Positions 1 to 9,315 of a stretch of 64,000 bases of DNA are shown here, piece after piece. Position 1 is the stretch's first letter. Every line of letters starts with the position of its first letter. The DNA is taken from positions 1 through 64,000 of the IMG/VR virus record IMGVR_UViG_3300025000_000053; one strand, given 5' to 3'. Both the position numbers and the translations under genes were made by a program. The notes beneath the pieces are model-generated. The model was not told the DNA's origin, searched no databases, and was given only the letters and a program-made list of their open reading frames with translations.

Positions 1-239
1 TTGAGTAATCCGCAGCCAAGTCTCTAATATATTAGAGAAAGGTTCAACGACTATCCTTTAGCTTTGAAATAAGCAACAGGAGTAGGGCTCAAGTGAGTGG
101 GTGAAAATCCCTTAAATCGAAATAGGAAGCTCCTTAATGAATAATTCATTAAGGATGAAGATATAGTCTAGTATCTTATCGAAAGATAAGGAAGTTCATA
201 AGAGAACTGTATTGTTTAACGAACAATATGAATATATCG
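1..239 (+). mobile_element. Group I intron 1 (3' part; 5' end outside window), no ORF in P6, inserted in an RNAP beta-prime gene
   Basis: Core elements AATCCGCAGC (Q), GTTCAACGACTAT (R/P7), AAGATATAGTC (S/P7'), ending AATATATCG at 239; near-identical to four other copies in the window. Confidence 0.92.
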
Positions 240-404
240 GATCAAGTATCATTAAAGGTATTATTTTCTCAAGAAGCTAATCTTGAGGCAGAAAGAATTA
301 TGAAATCAAAAGGTCATATTCTTAATATCTATGGACAAAATATGAGAAAGACAACAAATGAAGGTGCTCATACTTTATTTATGCTAACGAAGTTTAATAA
401 ATAA
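240..404 (+). CDS. Last exon of a multisubunit RNA polymerase beta-prime subunit (segment starting at the final Asp of the catalytic DxDGD), probably virion RNAP
   Basis: Not in ORF track; translates DQVSLKVLFSQEANLEAERIMKSKGHILNIYGQNMRKTTNEGAHTLFMLTKFNK*, aligning by eye to RpoC [41 protein letters not shown]. Confidence 0.85.
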   Translation, partial: DQVSLKVLFSQEANLEAERIMKSKGHILNIYGQNMRKTTNEGAHTLFMLTKFNK

Positions 405-410
405 ATAATA

Positions 411-475
411 AAAATATATGTGATTTATTCACATATATTTTTTTCGTATTTTTAACATTAATAGATATATATTAT
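411..475 (+). promoter_or_regulatory. Terminator hairpin + CGTA + early-type promoter TATATATTAT (466-475)
   Basis: AAAATATATGTGA/TCACATATATTTT hairpin, then CGTA at 445 and the core motif 21 nt later; same layout at four other sites. Confidence 0.7.
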
Positions 476-523
476 TTTAGTAATATGAATAAAATAATAT
501 AAATTATAAGGGGGGTTTTCATA

Positions 524-856
524 ATGAAAATAACATTTGATTATACCATGAAGGAAGCCAATTCTATTAACGGTTTAATAACAGAGGCAAATAATGTTGC
601 TAAACTGTTATCTGAAACAAAAGGCGATGTTATTGTTATACCGTTTGAAAACAGGCTTGCAACATTGAAAGTTGTCAAAGGTGAAAAAGCTGTGCTAGAT
701 ATTAATGAAGATTTCTTTATTGATTCTTTGTCGTATTTAACACATGTTTATAACCGAATTGTACCACTTGTTTTAGCTTATAAAAATCTTATACAAGATA
801 TATTCCCTGTTGCAAAAGATTATGTAAACAAATGGTTTCCAAAGAAAGATAAATAA
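524..856 (+). CDS. Hypothetical protein (early-type promoter)
   Basis: 110-aa ORF with G-rich RBS, promoter motif upstream and terminator downstream. Confidence 0.8.
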   Translation: MKITFDYTMKEANSINGLITEANNVAKLLSETKGDVIVIPFENRLATLKVVKGEKAVLDINEDFFIDSLSYLTHVYNRIVPLVLAYKNLIQDIFPVAKDYVNKWFPKKDK

Positions 857-887
857 ATTTTTATATATTTTTATTTAATTTTACCTA

Positions 888-923
888 AAAAAATAAAGGT
901 GTAATAATCCACCTTTATTTTTT
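888..923. terminator. Intrinsic terminator hairpin
   Basis: AAAAAATAAAGGTG / CACCTTTATTTTTT inverted repeat. Confidence 0.8.
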
Positions 924-938
924 GTGTGTTCCTTGCTT

Positions 939-950
939 AACACTATTATA
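939..950 (+). promoter_or_regulatory. Late-type promoter AACA-N6-TA
   Basis: AACACTATTATA; same motif precedes capsid, sheath, terminase and other genes. Confidence 0.6.
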
Positions 951-1460
951 CTAAATTTTTATTTTCATGAACCCGTTTCCTACTATAAAAAGAAATGGGG
1001 GTGATTAAAGAATTGATAATACAATTTATATAAATATAAAACATATTTATCATAGATATTGATAATATTTTTAACTCAAATAATTTATATCTTCTATCAG
1101 TAAAATAACATATAGAAGGGAGGGATGCCTATATACACATAACGATGTATATGGGATAACCTCTAATTATTTGCGAGTTTAAAAATATTATCTTTATATA
1201 ACTTTATTTAGAATTCGCCTACAAACTCCCCATAGACACTTGTGTATATAGGCAATCTATGATGGATGGGGACACTATCGGTTTAGAATATGATGAAGAA
1301 TAATATGCTACCTATTTGTTACAATGAATTTAGATAGTGTGAAAAAATACCTACTATTTTACAATTAAATATGTTCCGATATAAATAGTAGTAATGGTGA
1401 ATTTATTTTTATAAAATAAAAATAAAGCTCTGTGTAAATAATCCACAGAGCTTTATTTTT
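950..1460 (+). ncRNA. Candidate large structured non-coding RNA of unknown family
   Basis: No ORF >=60 aa; bounded by late promoter and terminator; nested stems 1061-1084/1166-1192, 1211-1219/1396-1404, 1272-1279/1333-1340, 1351-1359/1383-1391; perfect 14-bp pairing 1126-1139/1241-1254. Confidence 0.55.
1418..1460. terminator. Bidirectional intrinsic terminator
   Basis: AAAAATAAAGCTCTGTG / CACAGAGCTTTATTTTT. Confidence 0.85.
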
Positions 1461-1805
1461 TTATTTTTTTTCAATAACATCGGGTATAATTTCTGGTTTT
1501 AAATTTTTAATTTCTTTCTGTTCAGACTTAGTACTTTTATTACTTTGTATAGGAACATTTTGAATTACTACTGGTTTTGATTTAGGGATTTCTTCCTTTA
1601 TATCATTGTCTTTATCAAAATTACGAGCTGTTAATTTAATTTCAGTACCATCTTTAAGTACTTCAACAACATTAACACCTTTACTAATCATAGCAAAGAT
1701 AGTGGAAGTTTGTTCTGTATAAGGACTTAAGATTGGTCCATACACTCCACCCTTTGCCATAATAGGAGCTGTGCTAAGGATTTTAATATTTTTAGTTTTA
1801 ATCAT
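1461..1805 (-). CDS. Hypothetical protein
   Basis: 114-aa ORF with GGAGGG RBS. Confidence 0.8.
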   Translation of the reverse strand: MIKTKNIKILSTAPIMAKGGVYGPILSPYTEQTSTIFAMISKGVNVVEVLKDGTEIKLTARNFDKDNDIKEEIPKSKPVVIQNVPIQSNKSTKSEQKEIKNLKPEIIPDVIEKK

Positions 1806-1827
1806 TTGTTAAACCCTCCAATTTTAT

Positions 1828-2079
1828 TTAATAATTAGTATCCGGAATAAAATTTTCTTTAATATGCTTTAATTTTTCTTCCATATCCTGTTCTTCATCA
1901 AACTCAGGAATTCCGTCAACAAGTTTTTTAATTTCAGTACTTTCATCATCATCTATCAAGCCGGTATCATCCAAGATAGCATCACGAATATCATCATCGC
2001 CACTACTTTGGGCTACAGCTTCCATTAAAAACAGTTCTTGATTACTTTTACGAATATTTTTTTTAAGGTTAGATAACAA
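1828..2079 (-). CDS. Hypothetical acidic protein (start revised to TTG at 2079)
   Basis: GGGGGT RBS before TTG 2079; late motif at 2101-2112 (-); the longer ORF-track start overlaps the upstream gene. Confidence 0.65.
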   Translation of the reverse strand: MLSNLKKNIRKSNQELFLMEAVAQSSGDDDIRDAILDDTGLIDDDESTEIKKLVDGIPEFDEEQDMEEKLKHIKENFIPDTNY

Positions 2080-2122
2080 TATAATTACCCCCAATCTTTT
2101 TATTAAAATGTTTAAATGAAAA

Positions 2123-3313
2123 TTAGTTATTAGAAACAAATTTATTATAATAATATCGGAGAATAAATAATAACATAGGTATTTTAATATATGAATTAAA
2201 AGTATATTCCATATAATCATATTCTTCTAATTTTTCTAAATTTATATTATAAACTGAATCAATATGTTTATTAAAATAATCTACTAATAAATTTTCAATA
2301 ATAAAATCATCACTAAGTTTAACATCAGTCATTATACTATTTAAAACTTCTTCCTCAATATAATTATCACCACTATTAGTAAATGAAATAGAATTAACAT
2401 TATCCATATAATAAAGAAATATAGAATTATAATTTTGAATTATTGCATTGATATATTTAATACTTGTAGGTAAATTCTTTTTACCTCTTTCTAATAATCT
2501 ATAAATTGATTTCTCATATTCAATCACAAATGATAAACTATCATCTTCATTAACCAAACAAATTGTATTAAAATTATATTTTTCATTAAATAAGATATTA
2601 TTATTAATAAAATGATTTAAATATTTATCATAGAATTTATTACCAAATTCATTATTAAATATAAAGCAATTATATTTTTTATTGAAAAAAAATATTTTAT
2701 ACTTATCAGCTATATATCTATAAATTTCATTTAGTTTAAGTATTTTATAATAATCATCTTCTCGAATTAAACACTTTTCTTGTGTACCAATATTTCTTAA
2801 TACACAATTATATATTTCATTAATTTGATTTTCTAAATCCGTAACTAATTCTCCATAAGCTGATTTTAAAGTAAAAGAAATTTTATAATAATTATTACTC
2901 TTTATAGTATCATATTTAACTTCTGTTACCATAAATAAATAATTTTTATCTAAATATGAAATAGTAAAAAAATCATTTGGTAAAGGTTTAAGTGTATTAG
3001 GAAGAATAATAAGTTCACTATCAAAATTAGTTGTTAAACCCTCTTCTTCTTCACTTAATTCCAACATAATAGATTCTAAACCATATACAGGAAAGTCGTT
3101 TATCTTTTTAAACTTTAGTGGAGAATTTTCCCCTAATAAATCTTCAATATTTTCAAATCCACTATCAGTAATACTATTAATATTATCAATATTATAATAT
3201 GTAACAAATGTAGGATTTTTATCTAAAAATCTAGAATATTGAGAATTCATTCTTTCTTCATACTTAAAAATATTTTCATTAATAAAAGTTTTATCATCTA
3301 TTAAATATCCCAA
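2123..3313 (-). CDS. Probable virion structural protein
   Basis: 396-aa ORF, GAGGAG RBS, late motif at 3346-3357 (-). Confidence 0.55.
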   Translation of the reverse strand: MGYLIDDKTFINENIFKYEERMNSQYSRFLDKNPTFVTYYNIDNINSITDSGFENIEDLLGENSPLKFKKINDFPVYGLESIMLELSEEEEGLTTNFDSELIILPNTLKPLPNDFFTISYLDKNYLFMVTEVKYDTIKSNNYYKISFTLKSAYGELVTDLENQINEIYNCVLRNIGTQEKCLIREDDYYKILKLNEIYRYIADKYKIFFFNKKYNCFIFNNEFGNKFYDKYLNHFINNNILFNEKYNFNTICLVNEDDSLSFVIEYEKSIYRLLERGKKNLPTSIKYINAIIQNYNSIFLYYMDNVNSISFTNSGDNYIEEEVLNSIMTDVKLSDDFIIENLLVDYFNKHIDSVYNINLEKLEEYDYMEYTFNSYIKIPMLLFILRYYYNKFVSNN

Positions 3314-3493
3314 GATTTACTCAACTCCTCTCATATATTTTAAATTAATATAATGTTAAAAAATATAAAGAAAATGATTTTTTCGTATTTTTATTATATT
3401 TATTTATATATTATTTAAATATATTTAATAAAATAATCTTACTAATAAGGGTAAATAAAAATACTTATTAGATAGAAAGGATGAAAAAAATTA

Positions 3494-3910
3494 ATGGAAA
3501 CTTTAAATGATGTTTTATTACAGAATAGATGTGATTATTATAATGTATGCCTGGAACATGATTGTCCTTGTGCATTAGATAGTAAGGAATTCGATCCCGT
3601 ATTATATAATAAATTACAAGAAGATTATTATAATGATTTAAAATCTCTTGGTTTTATTAATAGTATTGATAGTAGTATTATAGATGAAGATTATTGTGAT
3701 GATGAAAATGATGATAGAGAAGAAGATAATTATATTGATTTTTATATAAGTAATAATGAAATAAAGGTAGGTGATTCTGTAGGATTTTATCCATATGATA
3801 GTTATGATATGATAGAAGGTAAAGTAATAGGAATAGTTGATAAAATTTTATTTATTGTTTGTTATAATGGGAGATTATATAAGGTTGATGAACTCGATAT
3901 TCTTAAATAA
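3494..3910 (+). CDS. Hypothetical protein with acidic linker and short beta-rich C-terminus
   Basis: 138-aa ORF, early cassette at 3384-3414. Confidence 0.75.
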   Translation: METLNDVLLQNRCDYYNVCLEHDCPCALDSKEFDPVLYNKLQEDYYNDLKSLGFINSIDSSIIDEDYCDDENDDREEDNYIDFYISNNEIKVGDSVGFYPYDSYDMIEGKVIGIVDKILFIVCYNGRLYKVDELDILK

Positions 3911-4002
3911 AAGAATGAGTATATTCTTTTATTTTTTTAGGAACATAGAAAAAAATAAATCAGTATAAAAATTTACTGATTTATTTTTAATAAATATAAA
4001 AT

Positions 4003-4266
4003 TTAAATATAAAGTTTTTCTTTATACTCATTTAACATATAAATAGCATTATCCCTCTTATCAGTATAAAGTTCTAACAATTCTTGAGGTGACAATAAAT
4101 CCCAATTATCTGTGTCAATAATAAATCTACCATTTTTGTGAAGACTTTGCAATTCTTCTGAAGTAAGAATTAATTTTAGTTTCATATGATGAAATAACAG
4201 TCCTTCTTTCTCAGCTTTCGCAAATAAAGGTTGGAACATTTTTAAAATTTTTTGTTCCTGAGTCAT
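4003..4266 (-). CDS. Hypothetical protein, paralog family A
   Basis: AEKEGLLF...GRFII..NWDLLSP motif shared with neighbours. Confidence 0.8.
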   Translation of the reverse strand: MTQEQKILKMFQPLFAKAEKEGLLFHHMKLKLILTSEELQSLHKNGRFIIDTDNWDLLSPQELLELYTDKRDNAIYMLNEYKEKLYI

Positions 4267-4283
4267 AAATAAATCACTCCAAA

Positions 4284-4568
4284 TTATTTTTTATAGGATT
4301 TTTGAATTCTTATTTTAAATGTTTCAAGCTGATTTTCAATATTCCTTTTCCTGCACTCTAACAACTTAACTTCTTCCATAGGATCCCTCAGTATCCAATT
4401 AGGTGGACCCCAAATAAATCGTCCTTCTATATGACATTTTCTTAATTCATCAGGAGTGAACCATGAACCCTCACGTTCCAAATAAAACCATAACCCTTTT
4501 TCATCAGCCTCTTTAAACATAGGCTCTAATGATTCTAAAATAGCATTAATATTTATTGAATTAAACAT
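4284..4568 (-). CDS. Hypothetical protein, paralog family A
   Basis: ADEKGLWF..WFTPDEL..GRFIW...NWILRDP. Confidence 0.8.
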   Translation of the reverse strand: MFNSININAILESLEPMFKEADEKGLWFYLEREGSWFTPDELRKCHIEGRFIWGPPNWILRDPMEEVKLLECRKRNIENQLETFKIRIQKSYKK

Positions 4569-4689
4569 TTTATCACCCCTAAAATTTTATTCTTATTGTA
4601 TTAATAATATATATTTAATTTTTTAACCTGGTCAATCAAAGATTTTGAAATTTCTTTTTTCTTATGTTACATTATTTTATAACCTCCAT

Positions 4690-4983
4690 TTATAAATCAA
4701 CCATTATTCGTTTATCAGAAGGATTATCAATTGAATCTCTAACATTACTAATTAATTCTTCAATTTTTATTTTCTTAGATTCCAATCTTTTAATCAATTT
4801 TTCAGGATGTTCAAGTCTCCAATTTCTAGATTTAATAAGTTTTCTTTTCATTAAAGACTTAAATTCAGGCACATTATACCAACAACCACTATTCATACCA
4901 AGGAACCATAATCCATTTTCTTCGGCATCTTTAATCATTTGATTTAATATTTCTTGATTTTTATCATTTATCATATTAAACAC
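4690..4983 (-). CDS. Hypothetical protein, paralog family A
   Basis: AEENGLWF..WYNVPEF...NWRLEHP. Confidence 0.8.
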   Translation of the reverse strand: MFNMINDKNQEILNQMIKDAEENGLWFLGMNSGCWYNVPEFKSLMKRKLIKSRNWRLEHPEKLIKRLESKKIKIEELISNVRDSIDNPSDKRIMVDL

Positions 4984-5027
4984 TCCTAAAATTTATTATT
5001 CATTACTTTAATAATATATATATATAT

Positions 5028-5585
5028 TTAATTTTTTATATAATTTTCAATTTTATTTATCTCTAATTGTATTATTTCTTTTTTTTCATATAAAGAGTTA
5101 AGAATATCGTTATGACCACGTAACTCCCATTTTGTTTTACACATAATATATTCAATATTGTTATAATAATCTATTATTCCATTAGGTGTGAACCAAATTT
5201 TTAAAAATTCATCATAAAGTAATAACTTTTCATTCCTAGCTTTATTAATTAAAGATTCCAATGTTTTAAGATAATTAATTATTTCATTTTTACTAGAAAT
5301 AGAAAAAGATTCATTCCTAGATAAAATATTTGTATAATCAAACAATCCCTCATTAACTAGTTTATCCAAATAATCCGACTGAATAAATTCTATATCTAAA
5401 GGTTTAAAATTTAAAAAACTTACATCTACGTTACCGTATTTATAAATACGGTAGTTATATTCCATTTTACAAGCAGCCCTATAAATTTTAATTAGTTTAG
5501 TTATATCAATATTCTTTTGACATAATTCAAAATACCAGTCCATTAATAATATTGCTTTATCATTATAAAAAGAATTAAAAAGCAT
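5028..5585 (-). CDS. Hypothetical protein with C-terminal family A domain
   Basis: ARNEKLLL..IWFTP...KWELRG. Confidence 0.75.
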   Translation of the reverse strand: MLFNSFYNDKAILLMDWYFELCQKNIDITKLIKIYRAACKMEYNYRIYKYGNVDVSFLNFKPLDIEFIQSDYLDKLVNEGLFDYTNILSRNESFSISSKNEIINYLKTLESLINKARNEKLLLYDEFLKIWFTPNGIIDYYNNIEYIMCKTKWELRGHNDILNSLYEKKEIIQLEINKIENYIKN

Positions 5586-5609
5586 GTATAAAAGACCCCC
5601 ATTATTTTT

Positions 5610-6191
5610 TTAATAAACTAATATATTCTTAACTTTATTCCAAATAAATACGAAATGTTCTAAAGCGAACTTATCGGCATATAATTCACTAACATCAAAA
5701 TTATGTGCTATACGTATAGGGTCATATTTATCAAGTTCTGATAATTTAAACATGATACATAAAGTATTTTTAATTATATTATCAAAATAAAAACTAGTGC
5801 TAATATCTTGATTATATTTATATAGTTCATTTAATTGAGCAATGTGACCATACTCATGTAATAAAAGCAAGAGAAAATTTGTTTCTGGGCTTAATTCTAA
5901 TCCAGTATTATATTTTAAAAAATTACCAAATCTTTCATTAGTTGATTTATAAAATTCAGGATATTGTTTATAAAAGCTTTCACAATCCTCATGTCTAATA
6001 TTTATTTCAGCAATAAATCTTTTTTTGTTTTTGTCCGAATAATTTTCATTAAATTCAACAAAAGCAAATTGATCTAAAAGGTCTTCTGGTACTGACTTAT
6101 ATTCCGATTCAATTAATTTAATCTTAACCTTACCATGTTTAAATTTAAATTCCTTTTTACAAAATTGAATACAATTTTCATAGAATGACAT
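5610..6191 (-). CDS. Putative zincin metallopeptidase (ImmA/IrrE-like motif layout)
   Basis: LLLLHEYGH and downstream ELYADKFA. Confidence 0.6.
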   Translation of the reverse strand: MSFYENCIQFCKKEFKFKHGKVKIKLIESEYKSVPEDLLDQFAFVEFNENYSDKNKKRFIAEINIRHEDCESFYKQYPEFYKSTNERFGNFLKYNTGLELSPETNFLLLLLHEYGHIAQLNELYKYNQDISTSFYFDNIIKNTLCIMFKLSELDKYDPIRIAHNFDVSELYADKFALEHFVFIWNKVKNILVY

Positions 6192-6439
6192 ATGCTATAA
6201 CCACCTTTTAATATTTTTTAATATAAAAATAACACCCTGGATACTCAACATAATGTATTTCAGTACCTGGTGTGGAGTCGTTATTAAGTGTATAACTAAC
6301 ACCATAATTACTACAACTTAATATATTTACAGCTATATATTCATCTTTTTACTAAATTTTTCATTATAAAATATTTCTTTACGACCCAATACTGCTTCAA
6401 CTAAATCCATAAATCTAGTTAATGGTGTATAATTTGGTT

Positions 6440-6736
6440 TCATTTAAAGTCACCCCAATTTAAAACTATATTTTTTATCACCTTAATAATATTATCAATT
6501 TTATTTTTTATTAAACCTTGTAACACTTCAAGTGTTGTTCGCACATCCCATTCATTGATATTAATTCTAGAACTTTGGTATAATATTTTAAATTCACTAG
6601 GACTAAGCCATTCATAACTTACAGTGTTATAAAATAAAAAACCTCCTGTCTTTTCCATATCTTCAACTAATTTATTTAAAGAATCTATTATTTCATAATT
6701 GAATATATGAGATTTATCAAAACCCTTGGATTTCAT
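6440..6736 (-). CDS. Hypothetical protein, divergent family A paralog
   Basis: MEKTGGFLF..EWLSPSEF...EWDVR. Confidence 0.7.
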   Translation of the reverse strand: MKSKGFDKSHIFNYEIIDSLNKLVEDMEKTGGFLFYNTVSYEWLSPSEFKILYQSSRININEWDVRTTLEVLQGLIKNKIDNIIKVIKNIVLNWGDFK

Positions 6737-7764
6737 TTAAATTTAACCTCCTTTTTAATTAAATTAATCTCATTCTTTTTTACACCATAATCTTTTCCTA
6801 AGCTATTATAATACAAATTTATCTTATTGACAAAAGGATTTAATTCTTCGAATAGGTTTTTATAAAACCATGGTTTTTTATCTTTATCTGAAAATATATT
6901 AATAACGACATTTCCTATTACACCTGATTGAATATAAAATTTTAATACATTAATAAACCCACACCCACATACTGCTGTATATATTTTATTACTTTTTTCT
7001 TTATCAAATACATTATAATATAAACCTAAAACATCAAATACACCTTCAGCTATATTCACAGTAATAGTTTTAGGTGAGAGTAAATCAATAGTATTAGGAA
7101 TCGAATAAAACTTTCTAGTATTATCTAGATTTTTATATATGCTGTATTTAAAGTACCTTTTATATTTTCCACTGGTATCTCTAAATACAATGTGTTCATT
7201 CTTAGCTGATAAGAATCCTACATATTTATTATGTAATAAACTGGCTTGTTCTTTATTAGTTGTTATGGTTTTAATATTATTATGTCTAAGAAATTCTCCA
7301 AAATTGAATACTACTTTTAATTTAATAAATTCCTCTTCAGTAATATTTATACCAAGTCTATTCTCAATATATTCTTTCTTCTCTTTCACTAATTCTTTTA
7401 ATACTGATAGTGGTATTTTAAAATCAAAAATATTATTTTTTATACCCAATGTCTTATTAATTTTTCCTATAGTTTCTTTATTATAAGATAATAATTTACT
7501 ATTAATCTGTAAATCATTAATCCTAAATGTTCTCAATATAGATGGAGTCATAACACCTGATATATCACATAAGAAACAATGGAAAATAATGGGTGTATTT
7601 GTGTTCAATTCAATTTTTATAAAGAAGTGAGCACTTGTGCTATTCTTTATACTATCACCACAAAAAGGACAACGAATCACTATTTGTGATTCGTTGACAC
7701 TTTTCGAAGAATGCACACTAAGTAATTTATTTCTTATTTTTAATTTAAAAGAATAATTATCCAT
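6733..7764 (-). CDS. DNA primase (zinc-binding + TOPRIM, T4 gp61-like)
   Basis: CPFCGDS...CFLC zinc ribbon; IAEGVFD and SDKD TOPRIM motifs. Confidence 0.8.
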   Translation of the reverse strand: MDNYSFKLKIRNKLLSVHSSKSVNESQIVIRCPFCGDSIKNSTSAHFFIKIELNTNTPIIFHCFLCDISGVMTPSILRTFRINDLQINSKLLSYNKETIGKINKTLGIKNNIFDFKIPLSVLKELVKEKKEYIENRLGINITEEEFIKLKVVFNFGEFLRHNNIKTITTNKEQASLLHNKYVGFLSAKNEHIVFRDTSGKYKRYFKYSIYKNLDNTRKFYSIPNTIDLLSPKTITVNIAEGVFDVLGLYYNVFDKEKSNKIYTAVCGCGFINVLKFYIQSGVIGNVVINIFSDKDKKPWFYKNLFEELNPFVNKINLYYNSLGKDYGVKKNEINLIKKEVKFK

Positions 7765-7776
7765 ATAAAAAACCTC

Positions 7777-9315
7777 TTATAGTTGATTTAAGAAACTTAA
7801 GAATTCATCAGACACAACATCTTGGTTGATTTCAAGTTTTTCACCAAGTTTATCTAGATGATCATAATCAACAATAGTAAATGTTGAATTTAAAATAGTT
7901 GATAATAAATTTAAAATCAAATTAGATTTCTTTATTTCTTCAAGAGTTGAATATTTGTCTTGTATCAATGATTGATACAATGGTGTTTCTTCTAATTTAT
8001 TTAAAAATTTTGTGTTTTGAATAGTACGAGTATTTAAACGACCCTCAATATTTCCACTTATAATTTGCGGAAGATACAAACCACCCTGAATTTGTAATCT
8101 TCTCTTCAGCAATATAACAAGAATTATATATTGCTTTCTTGTTAACAAATTTAAATCTCTATATCCACCAAAATATTTGGCATAGAAATAATGAACCAAT
8201 TGTTTTTGAAATTTATTTTTCTTATGAAATTTCTTATAGAAAGTAATTTCATCTTTAGTAATCTTAACACCAATTTTTTTCTTAATTTTTTTAATTGTGC
8301 TTTTGATATTTACTTCAGATAATATTATCAATGATTCATCTATTTTATTAGAGTTCATTTCAAACTTATCTAAACCACTTAAACCATCTTCACCACTTTT
8401 ATCCGCACTTAATTCAACGAGATTAACTTTATAGTTTTTCTTAATAACAAAATAAAGTTGTTTCTCTAATATAAAAGAATTAAAATTAACAATGTTTTTA
8501 TTAAAAACATATTTAAACATAGTTTCAGTTATGATATTCTTTTTCAATAAACTGTTAAGATAAATTAATGGATCAACACCAAATATTTCTTGTTGTTCCC
8601 ACATTGGTTTATTGGAGGATAAATTCTTATTTATTTTAGCTGATACTGTCACCATTAATTTATTATAAATATTAATACCGTTACCATACAATTCAAATAA
8701 ACCTTTATAAAAAGTATAAATGTAATCAACATCTTTCTTAATGTTATTCACATTAATATATTGAAATACTACTGGAATCATTATTTTAATAGACATCGAA
8801 ATCATCATCATTATCTTGGCATGTTCATTCGTTATCTCTAATGACTCACTATACTTCTTTTTATCATTACTAGTCAAATCAATATAATAATTATCTTCAA
8901 CCATTTTGATAATCTTTTCTTTCATACTATCAGTAAATAATATACCATATAAAAGTTTAATAAAAGTTTTAGGTTTTTTAACAGGTTTAGTTTTATCATC
9001 AATAAAATATTTGAGTTTAAAGTATGACATTAATAATTCATTATTAGTATCATAAAATTTAATAAAATAATTCAAATAATGAATTATACCTTTTTCATTC
9101 TTAATTATACCATTTTCATTTTTTTTATTGGTATTATTAAGTTGATTAACATATGATTCTTTCTTAATAATAAAAACATTCAATGTACTGGCACTATCTT
9201 TTTTAAATATTTTATCAAATGGGATTATTATTAATTTCCCATCACACTTGATGATATTATCTTCTTCTTCGGGCTCCCATTCATCTACTCTTATTAAGTC
9301 GGTAACACAATCCAT
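7777..9315 (-). CDS. Non-virion RNAP promoter-specificity (sigma-like) subunit, AR9 gp226-like
   Basis: Blocks IPFDKIFKKD..NVFIIKKESY, IYNKL, LSGLDKFEMN..DESLIILSEVNIKSTIKKIKKK resemble AR9 gp226 as recalled; two genes from GroEL as in AR9 (gp226/gp228); early motifs upstream. Confidence 0.75.
   Translation of the reverse strand: MDCVTDLIRVDEWEPEEEDNIIKCDGKLIIIPFDKIFKKDSASTLNVFIIKKESYVNQLNNTNKKNENGIIKNEKGIIHYLNYFIKFYDTNNELLMSYFKLKYFIDDKTKPVKKPKTFIKLLYGILFTDSMKEKIIKMVEDNYYIDLTSNDKKKYSESLEITNEHAKIMMMISMSIKIMIPVVFQYINVNNIKKDVDYIYTFYKGLFELYGNGINIYNKLMVTVSAKINKNLSSNKPMWEQQEIFGVDPLIYLNSLLKKNIITETMFKYVFNKNIVNFNSFILEKQLYFVIKKNYKVNLVELSADKSGEDGLSGLDKFEMNSNKIDESLIILSEVNIKSTIKKIKKKIGVKITKDEITFYKKFHKKNKFQKQLVHYFYAKYFGGYRDLNLLTRKQYIILVILLKRRLQIQGGLYLPQIISGNIEGRLNTRTIQNTKFLNKLEETPLYQSLIQDKYSTLEEIKKSNLILNLLSTILNSTFTIVDYDHLDKLGEKLEINQDVVSDEFLSFLNQL

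What the first reader, a model, noticed from the sequence alone, without database searches (positions are those of the whole stretch)
939..1460. Candidate novel ~500-nt structured phage RNA with a 14-bp interdomain pseudoknot or switch
Seen: an ORF-free interval in an otherwise gene-dense genome, starting at a late AACA-N6-TA motif (939-950) and ending at a terminator (1418-1460). Domain 1 is closed by GATAATATTTTTAACTCAAATAAT (1061-1084) with 1166-1192 and contains CTTCTAT/ATAGAAG and GAGG/CCTC stems. Domain 2 is closed by GAATTCGCC/GGTGAATTT (1211-1219/1396-1404, with G.U pairs) and holds TCCCCAT/ATGGGGA, CATAGA/TCTATG, ACACTATC/GATAGTGT and CTACTATTT/AAATAGTAG stems. TGCCTATATACACA (1126-1139) is perfectly complementary to TGTGTATATAGGCA (1241-1254), which lies in a domain 2 loop, but can instead pair locally with TGTATATGGG (1146-1155). 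I do not recognise tmRNA, RNase P, SRP or intron motifs. Inference: a late-expressed large ornate RNA (in the spirit of ROOL/GOLLD) with mutually exclusive conformations.
Basis: partly seen in the sequence, partly recalled or inferred. Interest (0 to 1): 0.85.

Follow-up and report, generated by a model that had tools for sequence, protein, structure and literature searches.

The report
Split ribosome-binding site for phage micropeptide
The "ORF-free structured RNA" is most likely the folded leader of a tiny, conserved 14-codon gene in an uncultured jumbo phage, in which a long-range RNA helix brings a strong ribosome-binding sequence next to a start codon 135 bases away.

Summary
The interval folds better than shuffles: z -4.7 on the + strand without the terminator, -3.6 on the - strand. 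It matches no Rfam family.

It is not ORF-free. Positions 1259-1303 encode MMDGDTIGLEYDEE. This micro-ORF recurs at the same syntenic place in 12 lineages of uncultured AR9-like jumbo phages. Its variation falls on third codon positions (entropy 0.35, 0.11 and 1.49 bits for positions 1, 2 and 3).

Eleven lineages keep an equivalent helix, several with different arm sequences and with G·U pairs that fit only the + strand.

- The 5' arm always starts 1-7 nt after a very strong Shine-Dalgarno-like motif.
- The 3' arm always ends 4-8 nt before the micro-ORF AUG.
- Across the helix the SD-AUG spacing is 5-14 nt, against 72-402 nt in linear sequence.
- One lineage has an ordinary contiguous site (8 nt).
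- An alternative local hairpin with SD:anti-SD pairing recurs in most lineages.

Best reading: a split ribosome-binding site, possibly a translational switch, like T4 genes 38 and 25 but with far larger inserts. It is not a ROOL/GOLLD-like RNA. Expression and peptide function are untested.

The parts
463..475 (+). AR9-type early-promoter box (AGATATATATTAT). It lies just after the terminator of the RNAP beta'-like gene. In most relatives this box directly precedes the micro-ORF RNA. Here the 110-aa gene sits in between.
   Evidence: It matches the AR9 early consensus AAATATATATTAT-(6N)-G (PMC5312081). A TATATATTAT-type box is present upstream of the element in all 16 loci. Promoter function is inferred, not shown.
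524..856 (+). 110-aa ORF of unknown function. It is an insertion/deletion relative to other lineages.
   Evidence: It is present in L004, deleted in L003 (which keeps only its RBS), and absent from L019, L013, L022 and L028-L036. It has no Pfam or PHROG hit.
887..924 (+). Terminator-like hairpin (AAAGGUG / CACCUUU followed by a U-run) after the 110-aa gene.
   Evidence: Sequence; conserved in L003 and L004.
939..950 (+). AACA-N6-TA match to the AR9 late-promoter consensus. It is not conserved.
   Evidence: L003 and L004 have ATCG and ACCG in place of AACA.
972..1006 (+). Upstream hairpin (CCCGUUUC 972-979 with GAAAUGGG 992-999) that buries a second orphan SD-like motif (GGGGGUGAU, about 993-1006). 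Its role is unexplained.
   Evidence: Conserved in L003 and L004. A similar GAAAUGAAGGUGAUUA occurs in L019.
1061..1192 (+). A long A-U-rich closing helix (1061-1084 with 1166-1192) encloses the CUUCUAU/AUAGAAG hairpin, the SD:anti-SD pairing and the local hairpin.
   Evidence: It is in the MFE fold. The closing helix is kept in L003 with a compensating extra U and extra A and a G-C to G.U change. It is weaker in L004.
1115..1124 (+). Strong Shine-Dalgarno-like motif GAAGGGAGGG (core GGAGG 1119-1123). No usable start codon follows within 4-15 nt.
   Evidence: It is the strongest SD-like 12-mer of the interval (-17.1 kcal/mol against the anti-SD; top 0.1%). It is one of only 14 such sites in the 64-kb window and one of 5 that lack a following ORF.
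1126..1139 (+). 5' arm of the long-range helix. It can pair instead with 1146-1155 as a local hairpin.
1146..1156 (+). 3' strand of the local hairpin. In the long-range state it pairs with 1228-1238, forming the second tier of the bipartite helix.
1160..1164 (+). Anti-SD-like CCUCU that pairs with the SD core in the OFF state.
   Evidence: Analogous pyrimidine tracts follow the local hairpin in most lineages.
1228..1254 (+). 3' side of the bipartite long-range helix: CCCCAUAGACA (1228-1238) plus the 14-nt 3' arm (1241-1254). It ends 4 nt before the AUG.
   Evidence: The pair probability is 0.96 when 1113-1291 is folded alone.
1259..1303 (+). Micro-ORF encoding MMDGDTIGLEYDEE, stop codon included. 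It belongs to a conserved acidic micropeptide family with the core (I/L)(I/L)L(D/E)G(D/E)T(I/V)(G/C).
   Evidence: All three substitutions among win, L003 and L004 are at third positions: Tyr synonymous, Glu to Asp, and TAA to TAG.
1304..1417 (+). 3' untranslated part with lineage-specific hairpins. ACACUAUC 1272-1279 pairs with GAUAGUGU 1333-1340. CUACUAUUU 1351-1359 pairs with AAAUAGUAG 1383-1391. The strand GGUGAAUUU 1396-1404 pairs with 1211-1219.
   Evidence: The 1351-1391 hairpin is deleted in L004. This part is not conserved in distant lineages.
1418..1460 (.). Bidirectional intrinsic terminator with a 17-bp stem and A/U runs on both sides. It is shared with the convergent 114-aa gene at 1461-1805 on the - strand.

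Best explanation
The interval is the structured leader and trailer of a very small mRNA that encodes a conserved acidic micropeptide (window 1259-1303, MMDGDTIGLEYDEE).

The micro-ORF has no adequate Shine-Dalgarno (SD) sequence of its own. A very strong SD-like motif (1115-1124) lies 135 nt upstream. A bipartite long-range helix (1127-1139 with 1241-1253, plus 1146-1156 with 1228-1238) loops out the sequence in between. Across the helix, the SD core and the AUG are about 8 unpaired nucleotides apart. This is a split, or discontinuous, ribosome-binding site.

The same nucleotides can fold differently. The 5' arm forms a local hairpin, the SD pairs with a downstream CCUCU, and the AUG region pairs with CCCCAUAGA. 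In that fold both the SD and the AUG are hidden. The element therefore probably toggles between a translation-OFF fold, which forms first during transcription, and a translation-ON fold that contains the long-range helix.

Shown by comparison of sequences:
- the micro-ORF is under selection as a coding sequence;
- the helix is maintained with changed sequences on the + strand;
- the helix always abuts a strong SD on one side and the AUG on the other.

Inferred:
- ribosomes use the juxtaposed SD and AUG;
- the two folds act as a switch;
- the transcript starts at the upstream early-type promoter (by read-through of the 887-924 terminator) or at the unconserved AACA motif;
- the peptide acts in trans. 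Its target is unknown.
For: 1. Coding signal.
- The micro-ORF is present at the same syntenic position, between the RNAP beta'-like gene and the convergent 114-aa gene, in 12 lineages with a confident match: the window clade, L019/L034, L013, L022, L005, L028-L032, L035 and L036.
- Across the 12 lineages, the entropy of the six core codons is 0.35, 0.11 and 1.49 bits at codon positions 1, 2 and 3.
- All three substitutions among win, L003 and L004 are third-position changes that preserve the residue, its class or the stop.

2. The helix.
- For each of 13 sequences, the best partner of the 34 nt before the AUG, anywhere upstream, is a segment that starts 1-7 nt after a top-0.1-1% SD-like 12-mer. 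Duplex energies are -16 to -32 kcal/mol.
- In a blind test I took the single strongest SD-like site and tested the 36 nt after it. In 8 of 11 lineages the pre-AUG segment is the best partner of all windows (z -3.7 to -10.3). The other three carry several SD-like sites.
- Arm sequences differ between lineages. Cognate pairs average -20.1 kcal/mol and non-cognate pairs -11.5.
- L003 has a U.G pair in the 14-bp arm helix. L004 has matching 2-nt deletions in both arms.
- The + strand duplex is at least as stable as the - strand duplex in 13 of 13 sequences, because of G.U pairs.

3. Geometry.
- Unpaired SD-to-AUG spacing across the helix is 5-14 nt (median 9). Linear distances are 72-402 nt.
- L036 has no insert and has a normal GGAGG-8 nt-AUG site in front of its homologous ORF.

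4. Thermodynamics.
- When the stretch from the SD to AUG+33 is folded alone, the long-range helix has mean pair probability 0.69-0.96 in 9 of 13 sequences.
- In the window, the forced helix costs about 7 kcal/mol relative to the full-length MFE (-95.8 against -102.7).

5. OFF fold.
- In most lineages the 5' module alone folds as an SD:anti-SD stem enclosing the local hairpin.

6. Conservation.
- The two most conserved 50-nt blocks of the interval are 1101-1150 (98% and 94% identity) and 1251-1300 (96% and 98%). These are the SD/5'-arm block and the micro-ORF. Neighbouring genes are mostly 74-90% identical.

7. Precedent.
- T4 genes 38 and 25 use a hairpin between SD and AUG to shorten the spacing from 22 to 5 nt and from 27 to 11 nt (PMC3014915).
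Against: - No expression data exist. No RNA run holding the sequence was listed. The transcript ends, translation and the peptide are all unobserved.
- In the window clade the peptide lacks the N-terminal MDDxxIIL part found elsewhere.
- A terminator (887-924) separates the conserved early-type promoter from the element.
- With the upstream sequence included, the predicted MFE prefers the OFF fold.
- In L013, L035 and L005 the long-range helix is not favoured by the energy model.
- No ribosome is known to accept an insert of 70-330 nt inside a binding site. The T4 precedents have inserts of about 20 nt.
- The arms are A/U-rich alternating sequences, which pair easily.
- In several lineages the arms share the CUACAUAUAU / AUAUAUGUAG sequence. 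The number of truly independent compensatory events is therefore smaller than the number of lineages.
- The peptide matches no PHROG family and no GenBank phage.
Confidence: 0.6

Rival explanations
1. This is a large non-coding structured RNA. The folded domains themselves are the functional product, as in ROOL or GOLLD. The micro-ORF and the SD-like motif are incidental parts of that structure.
For: The interval folds better than shuffles. All proposed helices exist and are kept in L003 and L004. The core is more conserved than the flanking genes. The micro-ORF lacks its own SD.
Against: There is no Rfam match. Outside the three close variants, neither sequence nor length is kept (nhmmer E 0.4-0.7 for two short motifs only; inserts 0-334 nt). 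The conserved piece shows 3-nt periodicity typical of coding sequence. L036 reduces the whole element to promoter, RBS, micro-ORF and terminator within a 280-nt interval.
Confidence: 0.1
2. The SD-like motifs are 5' stabilisers. They would work like the STAB-SD of Bacillus thuringiensis cryIIIA, which binds the 16S rRNA 3' end without initiating and so blocks 5'-3' decay. On this view the long-range helix merely closes a structured domain, and the micro-ORF is translated poorly, independently or not at all.
For: Two of the five orphan strong SD-like sites in the 64-kb window lie in this interval, at 997 and 1119. Several lineages carry two or three such motifs. The motifs resemble GAAAGGAGG.
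Against: It does not explain why, in 11 lineages, the helix starts 1-7 nt after one SD-like site and ends 4-8 nt before the AUG, giving an RBS-like 5-14 nt spacing. It also does not explain why the insert-free lineage uses the motif as an ordinary RBS. The two roles are not mutually exclusive.
Confidence: 0.12
3. The bipartite helix of about 22-26 bp is an RNase III processing stalk. Cleavage would excise the enclosed RNA, or would separate SD from AUG. This would work as processing-dependent regulation of an early phage transcript.
For: The helix is long and is interrupted by an internal loop, like known RNase III sites. That Firmicute phage early RNAs are processed by RNase III is my own knowledge, not tested here.
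Against: The enclosed sequences are not conserved between lineages and can be absent, so no conserved excised product exists. Cleavage would uncouple SD and AUG. No data bear on cleavage.
Confidence: 0.1
4. It is a DNA-level element in a convergent intergenic region, such as a replication origin, a cruciform or a protein-binding inverted repeat.
For: It is an A/T-rich interval between convergent genes with many inverted repeats. The - strand also folds better than shuffles (z -3.6). One relative (L005) has a 36-nt-periodic, iteron-like array at this locus.
Against: G.U pairs make the helices systematically better on the + strand (13 of 13; L003 changes). The conserved core shows codon periodicity. 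The helix positions are tied to translation signals.
Confidence: 0.05

Closest known systems
Split ribosome-binding sites of bacteriophage T4 genes 38 and 25 (Nivinskas et al. 1999; Malys and Nivinskas 2009; reviewed in PMC3014915)
   Same: SD and AUG are too far apart in linear sequence. An intervening RNA structure brings them to a functional spacing: 22 to 5 nt and 27 to 11 nt in T4, and 72-402 to 5-14 nt here. In both cases the structure is phylogenetically conserved within a phage clade and absent in relatives that have a contiguous site.
   Different: The T4 inserts are single small hairpins of about 20 nt in front of ordinary structural genes. Here the helix is 12-17 bp plus a second tier, and it encloses 31-334 nt of lineage-specific structure. 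The gene is an 11-29-codon micro-ORF. A conserved competing fold hides the SD and the AUG. Function here is untested.
Translational RNA switches with SD sequestration (for example the two conformations of lambda cIII mRNA, RNA thermometers and translational riboswitches)
   Same: Mutually exclusive pairings either hide or expose the SD and the start codon. The anti-SD tract CCUCU pairs with the SD.
   Different: No ligand-binding aptamer, protein partner or temperature dependence has been identified. The ON state does more than expose the RBS: it assembles it from two distant halves. The lambda cIII comparison comes from my own knowledge.
ROOL / GOLLD large ornate RNAs of phages and Firmicutes
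   Same: Size of about 500 nt, phage context and a multi-helix fold with long-range pairing.
   Different: There is no covariance-model match. There is no conserved multi-domain architecture between lineages. The element contains a coding micro-ORF that is its most conserved part.
STAB-SD 5' mRNA stabiliser (B. thuringiensis cryIIIA)
   Same: A perfect SD-like sequence in an untranslated region, with no adjacent start codon, in a low-GC Gram-positive-type system.
   Different: Here the motif is joined by a conserved helix to a start codon. Any stabilising role is untested.

Membership tests
Rfam large structured RNAs (ROOL, GOLLD, tmRNA, RNase P, group I/II introns and others) | Match to the family covariance model | tested here: not met
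   cmscan of the whole window at gathering thresholds gives 0 hits. A scan of 850-1520 at E<=10 gives only terminator-like sub-threshold noise. ARAGORN finds no tmRNA.
Large ornate non-coding RNA (ROOL/GOLLD-like, generic) | Multi-domain secondary structure conserved, with covariation, across divergent homologues | tested here: not met
   Beyond the three close variants, only two short motifs align. The sequence enclosed by the helix varies from 0 to 334 nt. Only the SD-helix-AUG module and the local 5' hairpin recur.
Large ornate non-coding RNA (generic) | Absence of protein-coding signal | tested here: not met
   The core shows three-nucleotide periodicity of variation: 0.35, 0.11 and 1.49 bits at codon positions 1, 2 and 3.
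Split (discontinuous) ribosome-binding site, T4 gene 38/25 type | SD and start codon are separated by more than a functional spacing in linear sequence | tested here: met
   The distance is 135 nt in the window and 72-402 nt in the other lineages. The micro-ORF has no adequate SD of its own.
Split (discontinuous) ribosome-binding site, T4 gene 38/25 type | An intervening structure reduces the effective spacing to a functional 5-13 nt | tested here: met
   Unpaired spacing across the helix is 5-14 nt, with a median of 9 and 8 in the window. This rests on predicted pairing, not on probing.
Split (discontinuous) ribosome-binding site, T4 gene 38/25 type | The structure is phylogenetically maintained, and relatives with a contiguous site exist | tested here: met
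   The helix is present in 11 lineages, several with different arm sequences. L036 has a contiguous GGAGG-8 nt-AUG site.
Split (discontinuous) ribosome-binding site, T4 gene 38/25 type | Destabilising the structure lowers translation, and compensatory changes restore it | not testable with these tools
   This needs reporter fusions or toeprinting.
Translational riboswitch or RNA switch | Conserved, mutually exclusive folds that hide or expose the SD and AUG | tested here: inconclusive
   The 5' module folds as an SD:anti-SD stem plus a local hairpin in most lineages, and the long-range helix competes with it. Both are predictions. The anti-SD pairing is short and its statistics are weak: 1-46% of control windows pair as well.
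Translational riboswitch or RNA switch | A defined trigger (ligand aptamer, protein or temperature) | not tested
   None was identified. No known aptamer matched.
Small protein-coding gene (micropeptide) | Purifying selection at the amino-acid level across lineages | tested here: met
   The motif occurs only once in the six-frame translation of the 64-kb window.
Small protein-coding gene (micropeptide) | Evidence of translation, or membership of a known protein family | tested here: not met
   There is no PHROG match. tblastn against GenBank phages gives no meaningful hit (best E = 6). No RNA or ribosome data were available.
AR9-type late promoter (AACA-N6-TA/G) | Consensus match that is conserved in homologues | tested here: not met
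   The match at 939-950 is present in the window only. L003 and L004 differ in the AACA tetranucleotide.
AR9-type early promoter (AAATATATATTAT-N6-G) | Consensus box upstream of the element | tested here: met
   The window has AGATATATATTAT at 463-475. A TATATATTAT-type box is upstream in all 16 loci. Activity is untested. In the window a gene and a terminator lie between the box and the element.

The most novel reading that the evidence does not exclude
The lineage-specific RNA enclosed by the helix, together with the conserved OFF hairpin, forms a sensor for a metabolite, a protein, temperature or the timing of co-transcriptional folding. The sensor decides whether the two halves of the ribosome-binding site are assembled. 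That would be a new class of 'RBS-assembling' riboregulator, controlling an early regulatory micropeptide found across a clade of nucleus-less AR9-like jumbo phages. The peptide's position next to the phage RNA polymerase genes hints at a role in transcription.
Probability: 0.2. Interest if true: 0.8.

Novelty: new variant of a known kind. Interest (0 to 1): 0.55.

Why it matters
If the model holds, three things follow.

1. It would extend the split ribosome-binding-site principle. That principle is so far known from two T4 genes with inserts of about 20 nt. Here the inserts reach hundreds of nucleotides. This would show that bacterial-type ribosomes can use an SD and a start codon brought together by long-range RNA structure.

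2. It defines a previously unannotated, deeply conserved micropeptide gene in a large clade of uncultured jumbo phages related to AR9/PBS1. Ordinary gene callers and ORF-length cut-offs miss it.

3. It gives a compact natural RNA device (SD, 5' arm, insert, 3' arm, AUG, with a competing OFF hairpin). The device is directly testable with compensatory mutations and could be reused as a translational switch.

It is also a caution for genome scans. An 'ORF-free, highly structured, highly conserved' interval can be the leader of a micro-ORF rather than a non-coding RNA.

Tried and rejected
- Rfam at gathering and at permissive thresholds gave nothing relevant.
- blastn of the interval against 50,697 GenBank phage records gave no match.
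- An exact 18-mer scan of IMG/VR found only the window's own contig and its two close variants.
- An nhmmer profile of the three close copies against the distant loci gave only two short motifs at E 0.4-0.7. Homology of whole 'domains' was therefore rejected.
- RNAalifold on a MAFFT alignment of 11 modules returned no structure, because MAFFT split the 5' arm around the variable insert. I replaced it with anchored duplex calculations and controls in Python.
- I did not use the count of structure pairs. It needed a dot-bracket string of more than 500 characters, and I did not want to type one.
- Two searches for RNA sequencing runs (the window, and L013) listed no run holding the sequence.
- The peptide was searched against PHROGs and GenBank phages without result. 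The search for homologous proteins refuses queries under 40 aa.
- Tiny ORFs directly after the SD (MPIYT in the window, MYEP in L005) were considered and rejected, because they are not conserved.
- MITE-like terminal inverted repeats were considered and rejected. The arms differ between lineages, tolerate G.U pairs, and are locked to the SD and the AUG.
- An intron between SD and AUG was considered and rejected. There are no group I or group II core motifs and no conserved insert.
- A resemblance of DGDTIG to the N-terminal strand of staphylococcal-nuclease-like proteins was noted from memory. It was not pursued, because the peptides are too short to test.
- The genome-contig scan for host clues returned only a Herbinix sp. 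MAG contig that lacks the micro-ORF.
Full report
**Context**

The window is the start of IMG/VR contig IMGVR_UViG_3300025000_000053 (249,853 bp; also listed as Ga0209318_1000017). The only RNA-run rows listed were same-sample and same-study additions labelled groundwater metagenome, so the contig probably comes from groundwater. The genome is about 24% G+C. It encodes a split multisubunit RNA polymerase, a GroEL, a divergent family-B DNA polymerase, and a virion protein whose nearest cultured relatives are Bacillus phages AR9 and PBS1 and the Staphylococcus jumbo phages, at about 36% identity. So it is an uncultured AR9-like jumbo phage.

The finding lies between two convergent genes: a 110-aa ORF at 524-856 (+) and a 114-aa ORF at 1461-1805 (-). 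It is bounded by terminator-like hairpins at 887-924 and 1418-1460.

Yes, for the pairings.
- 1126-1139 is the perfect reverse complement of 1241-1254 (-20.5 kcal/mol).
- 1128-1137 can instead pair with 1146-1155 (-10.9 kcal/mol).
- Without the terminator the + strand folds at -102.7 kcal/mol, against -79.3 ± 5.0 for dinucleotide shuffles (z = -4.7). The - strand gives z = -3.6.
- Rfam finds nothing at curated thresholds in the whole window. At E<=10 it finds only terminator-like noise. ARAGORN finds no tmRNA.

Two points do not hold up.
- The AACA-N6-TA motif at 939-950 fits the AR9 late-promoter consensus (PMC5312081), but it is not kept in the two closest homologues.
- 'ORF-free' is true only above about 25 codons.

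**Homologues**

Two close copies exist.
- L003 is 87% identical over the interval.
- L004 is 78% identical. Oddly, it lies at the other end of the same contig.

Across these three, the most conserved 50-nt blocks are 1101-1150 (98% and 94%) and 1251-1300 (96% and 98%). That is as high as the best-conserved coding blocks nearby (the RNAP exon and parts of the virion protein gene). Most neighbouring coding sequence is 74-90% identical.

I then used the flanking virion protein and the 114-aa protein to fetch more distant relatives (40-62% protein identity) from IMG/VR, JGI, ENA, NCBI and Logan assemblies.
- All of them have an interval without long ORFs, 280-1,650 nt long, at the same place. It lies between the C-terminal end of the RNAP beta'-like gene and the convergent 114-aa homologue.
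- AR9 itself does not. At the positionally equivalent spot, AR9 has a 41-nt gap.
- At the nucleotide level these intervals are not alignable with the window, apart from two short motifs.

**The conserved core is a micro-ORF**

One of the two motifs is a short reading frame. Its products in the different lineages are:

| Lineage | Peptide |
|---|---|
| window, 1259-1303 | MMDGDTIGLEYDEE |
| L019 | MDEGEDIILEGDTIGGFE |
| L013 | MDDRDDIILDGDTIGVEDDDNDNE |
| L005 | MMRKEYECVDDVVLDGETVGVWR |
| L028 | MDDMILDGETICVFE |
| L029 | MNDDYPFTSENDGEDENIILEGDTIGEWE |
| L030 | MDDNDLILDGDTIGIEEY |
| L031 | MDDFLMDGETICTFDDDDED |
| L032 | MDDIIILDGETIGIFED |
| L035 | MDDLWMDGETYGCEDEDEDEE |
| L036 | MNVQPIKPNNVYEGETMGMPV |
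| L022 (more doubtful) | MFESETYGEEN |

- Over the six core codons in 12 non-redundant lineages, the mean column entropy is 0.35, 0.11 and 1.49 bits at codon positions 1, 2 and 3.
- Among the three close variants, all three substitutions in the ORF are third-position changes: TAT to TAC, GAA to GAC and TAA to TAG.
- The motif occurs only once in the six-frame translation of the 64-kb window.

I take this as strong evidence that the frame is translated and that the peptide sequence is under selection. The peptide matches no PHROG family and nothing meaningful in GenBank phages.

**The 14-bp helix is conserved and joins an SD to the start codon**

The micro-ORF has no adequate SD of its own. The second conserved motif is a very strong SD-like sequence. 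It is GAAGGGAGGG at 1115-1124 in the window, and GAAAGGAGGUGA or a close variant elsewhere. No start codon follows it at a usable distance.

For each of 13 sequences I asked which upstream segment pairs best with the 34 nt before the micro-ORF AUG.
- In every case the answer is a segment that starts 1-7 nt after a top-0.1-1% SD-like 12-mer. Duplex energies are -16 to -32 kcal/mol. The 3' arm ends 4-8 nt before the AUG.
- The helix is bipartite: 12-17 bp in most lineages, an internal loop, then 6-10 bp.
- In the window it is 1127-1139 with 1241-1253, plus 1146-1156 with 1228-1238.

Its sequence differs between several lineages:

| Lineage | 5' arm | 3' arm |
|---|---|---|
| window | GCCUAUAUACACA | UGUGUAUAUAGGC |
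| L019 | GCUGCAUAUAUUAUA | UAUAAUAUAUGUAGC |
| L013 | GCUACGUAUAUUC | GAAUGUAUGUAGU |

The arms of L022, L005 and L035 are different again.

Controls:
- I chose the strongest SD-like site blindly and tested the 36 nt after it against all other windows of the same interval. The pre-AUG segment is the unique best partner in 8 of 11 lineages (z -3.7 to -10.3). The remaining three have several SD-like sites, and there the helix uses the second-strongest.
- Cognate arm pairs average -20.1 kcal/mol, against -11.5 for non-cognate pairs.
- L003 carries a U.G pair in the 14-bp arm helix. L004 has matching 2-nt deletions in both arms.
- Because of G.U pairs, the + strand duplex is at least as stable as its - strand counterpart in 13 of 13 sequences. 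This places the structure in the RNA that also carries the micro-ORF.

**Geometry**

Counting only unpaired nucleotides between the GGAGG core and the AUG, the spacing across the helix is 5-14 nt (median 9; 8 in the window). The linear distance is 72-402 nt, and the enclosed sequence is 31-334 nt.

Lineage L036 has no insert at all. Its whole interval is 280 nt: promoter box, GAGGAGG, 8 nt, AUG, a 21-codon homologous ORF and a terminator. This is the pattern expected if the helix assembles a ribosome-binding site from two halves.

The closest documented case is the split site of T4 genes 38 and 25. There a small hairpin between SD and AUG shortens 22 nt to 5 and 27 nt to 11. It is needed for efficient initiation, and it is conserved only within the close T-even phages (PMC3014915).

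**Two folds**

- Folded alone, the stretch from the SD to AUG+33 adopts the long-range helix. Mean pair probability is 0.96 in the window and 0.69 or more in 9 of 13 sequences. The SD stays mostly unpaired.
- The 5' half alone folds differently in most lineages. The 5' arm pairs with the segment just after it, and the SD pairs with a following pyrimidine tract: CCUCU at 1160-1164 in the window, and CCUCUU, CUCUUUU, UCACCU and similar elsewhere.
- In the window clade a further 24-bp A-U-rich helix (1061-1084 with 1166-1192) clamps this OFF module. It is kept in L003 by a compensating extra U and extra A.
- With it, the full-length MFE is the OFF fold at -102.7 kcal/mol. Forcing the long-range helix gives -95.8.
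- In the OFF fold the AUG region can also pair with CCCCAUAGA.

If the clamp helix persists, the long-range pairing is formally a pseudoknot. I read the element as a translational switch whose ON state assembles the binding site. The trigger is unknown. It could be simple folding kinetics (the OFF module is transcribed first), temperature, a protein or a ligand.

**Transcription**

In all 16 loci, a box matching the AR9 early-promoter consensus (AAATATATATTAT-N6-G; PMC5312081) follows the terminator of the RNAP gene and precedes the element. In most lineages nothing lies in between, so early transcription by the virion RNA polymerase is the likeliest source.

In the window and L004, the 110-aa gene and a terminator have been inserted between the box (463-475) and the element. 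In L003 that gene has been deleted again, leaving its RBS.

In the window, then, the RNA would arise by read-through of the 887-924 terminator or from the unconserved AACA motif. No RNA sequencing run holding this sequence, or that of L013, was listed. Transcript ends and abundance remain unknown.

**Rivals**

- *Purely non-coding ornate RNA.* This is hard to reconcile with the codon periodicity, with the lack of any conserved domain architecture, and with the minimal L036 version.
- *STAB-SD-like stabiliser.* This role is compatible with the two orphan SD-like sites at 997 and 1119, which are two of only five in the 64-kb window. It may coexist with the split site. It does not explain the helix geometry.
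- *RNase III stalk.* This cannot be excluded, but there is no conserved excised product.
- *DNA-level element.* The strand asymmetry and the coding signal argue against it.

**Verdict**

The sequence features are real, and the long-range helix is one of the better-supported parts of the finding. The element is best described as the structured mRNA of a conserved acidic micropeptide with a discontinuous, probably switchable, ribosome-binding site. It is a new and much larger variant of a mechanism known from T4, not a new class of large non-coding RNA.

Approximate confidence:
- 0.9 that the micro-ORF is coding;
- 0.9 that the helix is selected;
- 0.6 that its function is to assemble the binding site;
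- 0.4 that it operates as a regulated switch.

Noticed in passing
window 1-191 (+), exon about 228-404: The window starts inside a group I intron (RF00028, 56 bits, 5'-truncated by the window edge) that interrupts the RNAP beta'-like gene. The last exon (...GQNMRKTTNEGAHTLFMLTKFNK) follows. Relatives carry GIY-YIG homing-endonuclease ORFs in this intron (L003 9329-9952, L019 5713-6441, and the Pfam GIY-YIG genes in L033 and L034). L013, L022, L031, L035 and L036 have an uninterrupted gene of about 528 aa.
   Followed up: partly
window 524-856; L003 about 8440-8960; L004 8455-8778: The 110-aa gene between the early-promoter box and the element is an indel. It is present in the window and L004. 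It is deleted in L003, where only its RBS and a few codons remain. It is absent from all the more distant lineages.
   Followed up: partly
contig IMGVR_UViG_3300025000_000053, positions 1-9313 and 224449-237636 (L001 and L004): The same contig carries two diverged copies (about 78-89% identical) of the whole region, one near each end and in the same orientation. This suggests either a chimeric assembly of two strains or a diverged long terminal duplication.
   Followed up: no
L005 8786-10130 (- strand): In this relative the micro-ORF is followed by about 1.3 kb of degenerate repeats. There are 19 GAATCA and 18 ATTTCA motifs, spaced at multiples of about 36 nt. It looks like an iteron-like array or a repeated RNA motif, and it is found in no other lineage examined.
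   Followed up: partly
window 972-1006: A second orphan, very strong SD-like motif (AAAUGGGGGUGAU) is buried in a conserved hairpin upstream of the main module. A similar GAAAUGAAGGUGAUUA occurs in L019. No conserved ORF follows it. Its role is unexplained.
   Followed up: partly
window 26338 (+), 55465 (-), 6647 (-): These are the other three strong SD-like sites in the window that are not followed by an ORF of 30 aa or more. Two precede ORFs of 25 and 22 codons. They may mark further micro-ORFs or other split sites.
   Followed up: no
L036 6441-6720 (- strand): This is a minimal version of the locus in 280 nt: an early-promoter box, a contiguous GAGGAGG-8 nt-AUG site, a 21-codon homologue of the micro-ORF, and a G+C-rich terminator.
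   Followed up: yes
L034 1-757: A TnpB/IS605 OrfB-like gene (Pfam OrfB_IS605, Cas12f1-like_TNB) lies a few kb from the virion protein gene in one jumbo-phage relative.
   Followed up: no
L033 (GCA_949063285.1, labelled Romboutsia ilealis) and L037 (MAG labelled Herbinix sp.): Related jumbo-phage contigs of more than 200 kb are filed inside Clostridia genome bins. This hints at Firmicute hosts and fits the Firmicute-style SD motifs. Binning is not proof of host.
   Followed up: no
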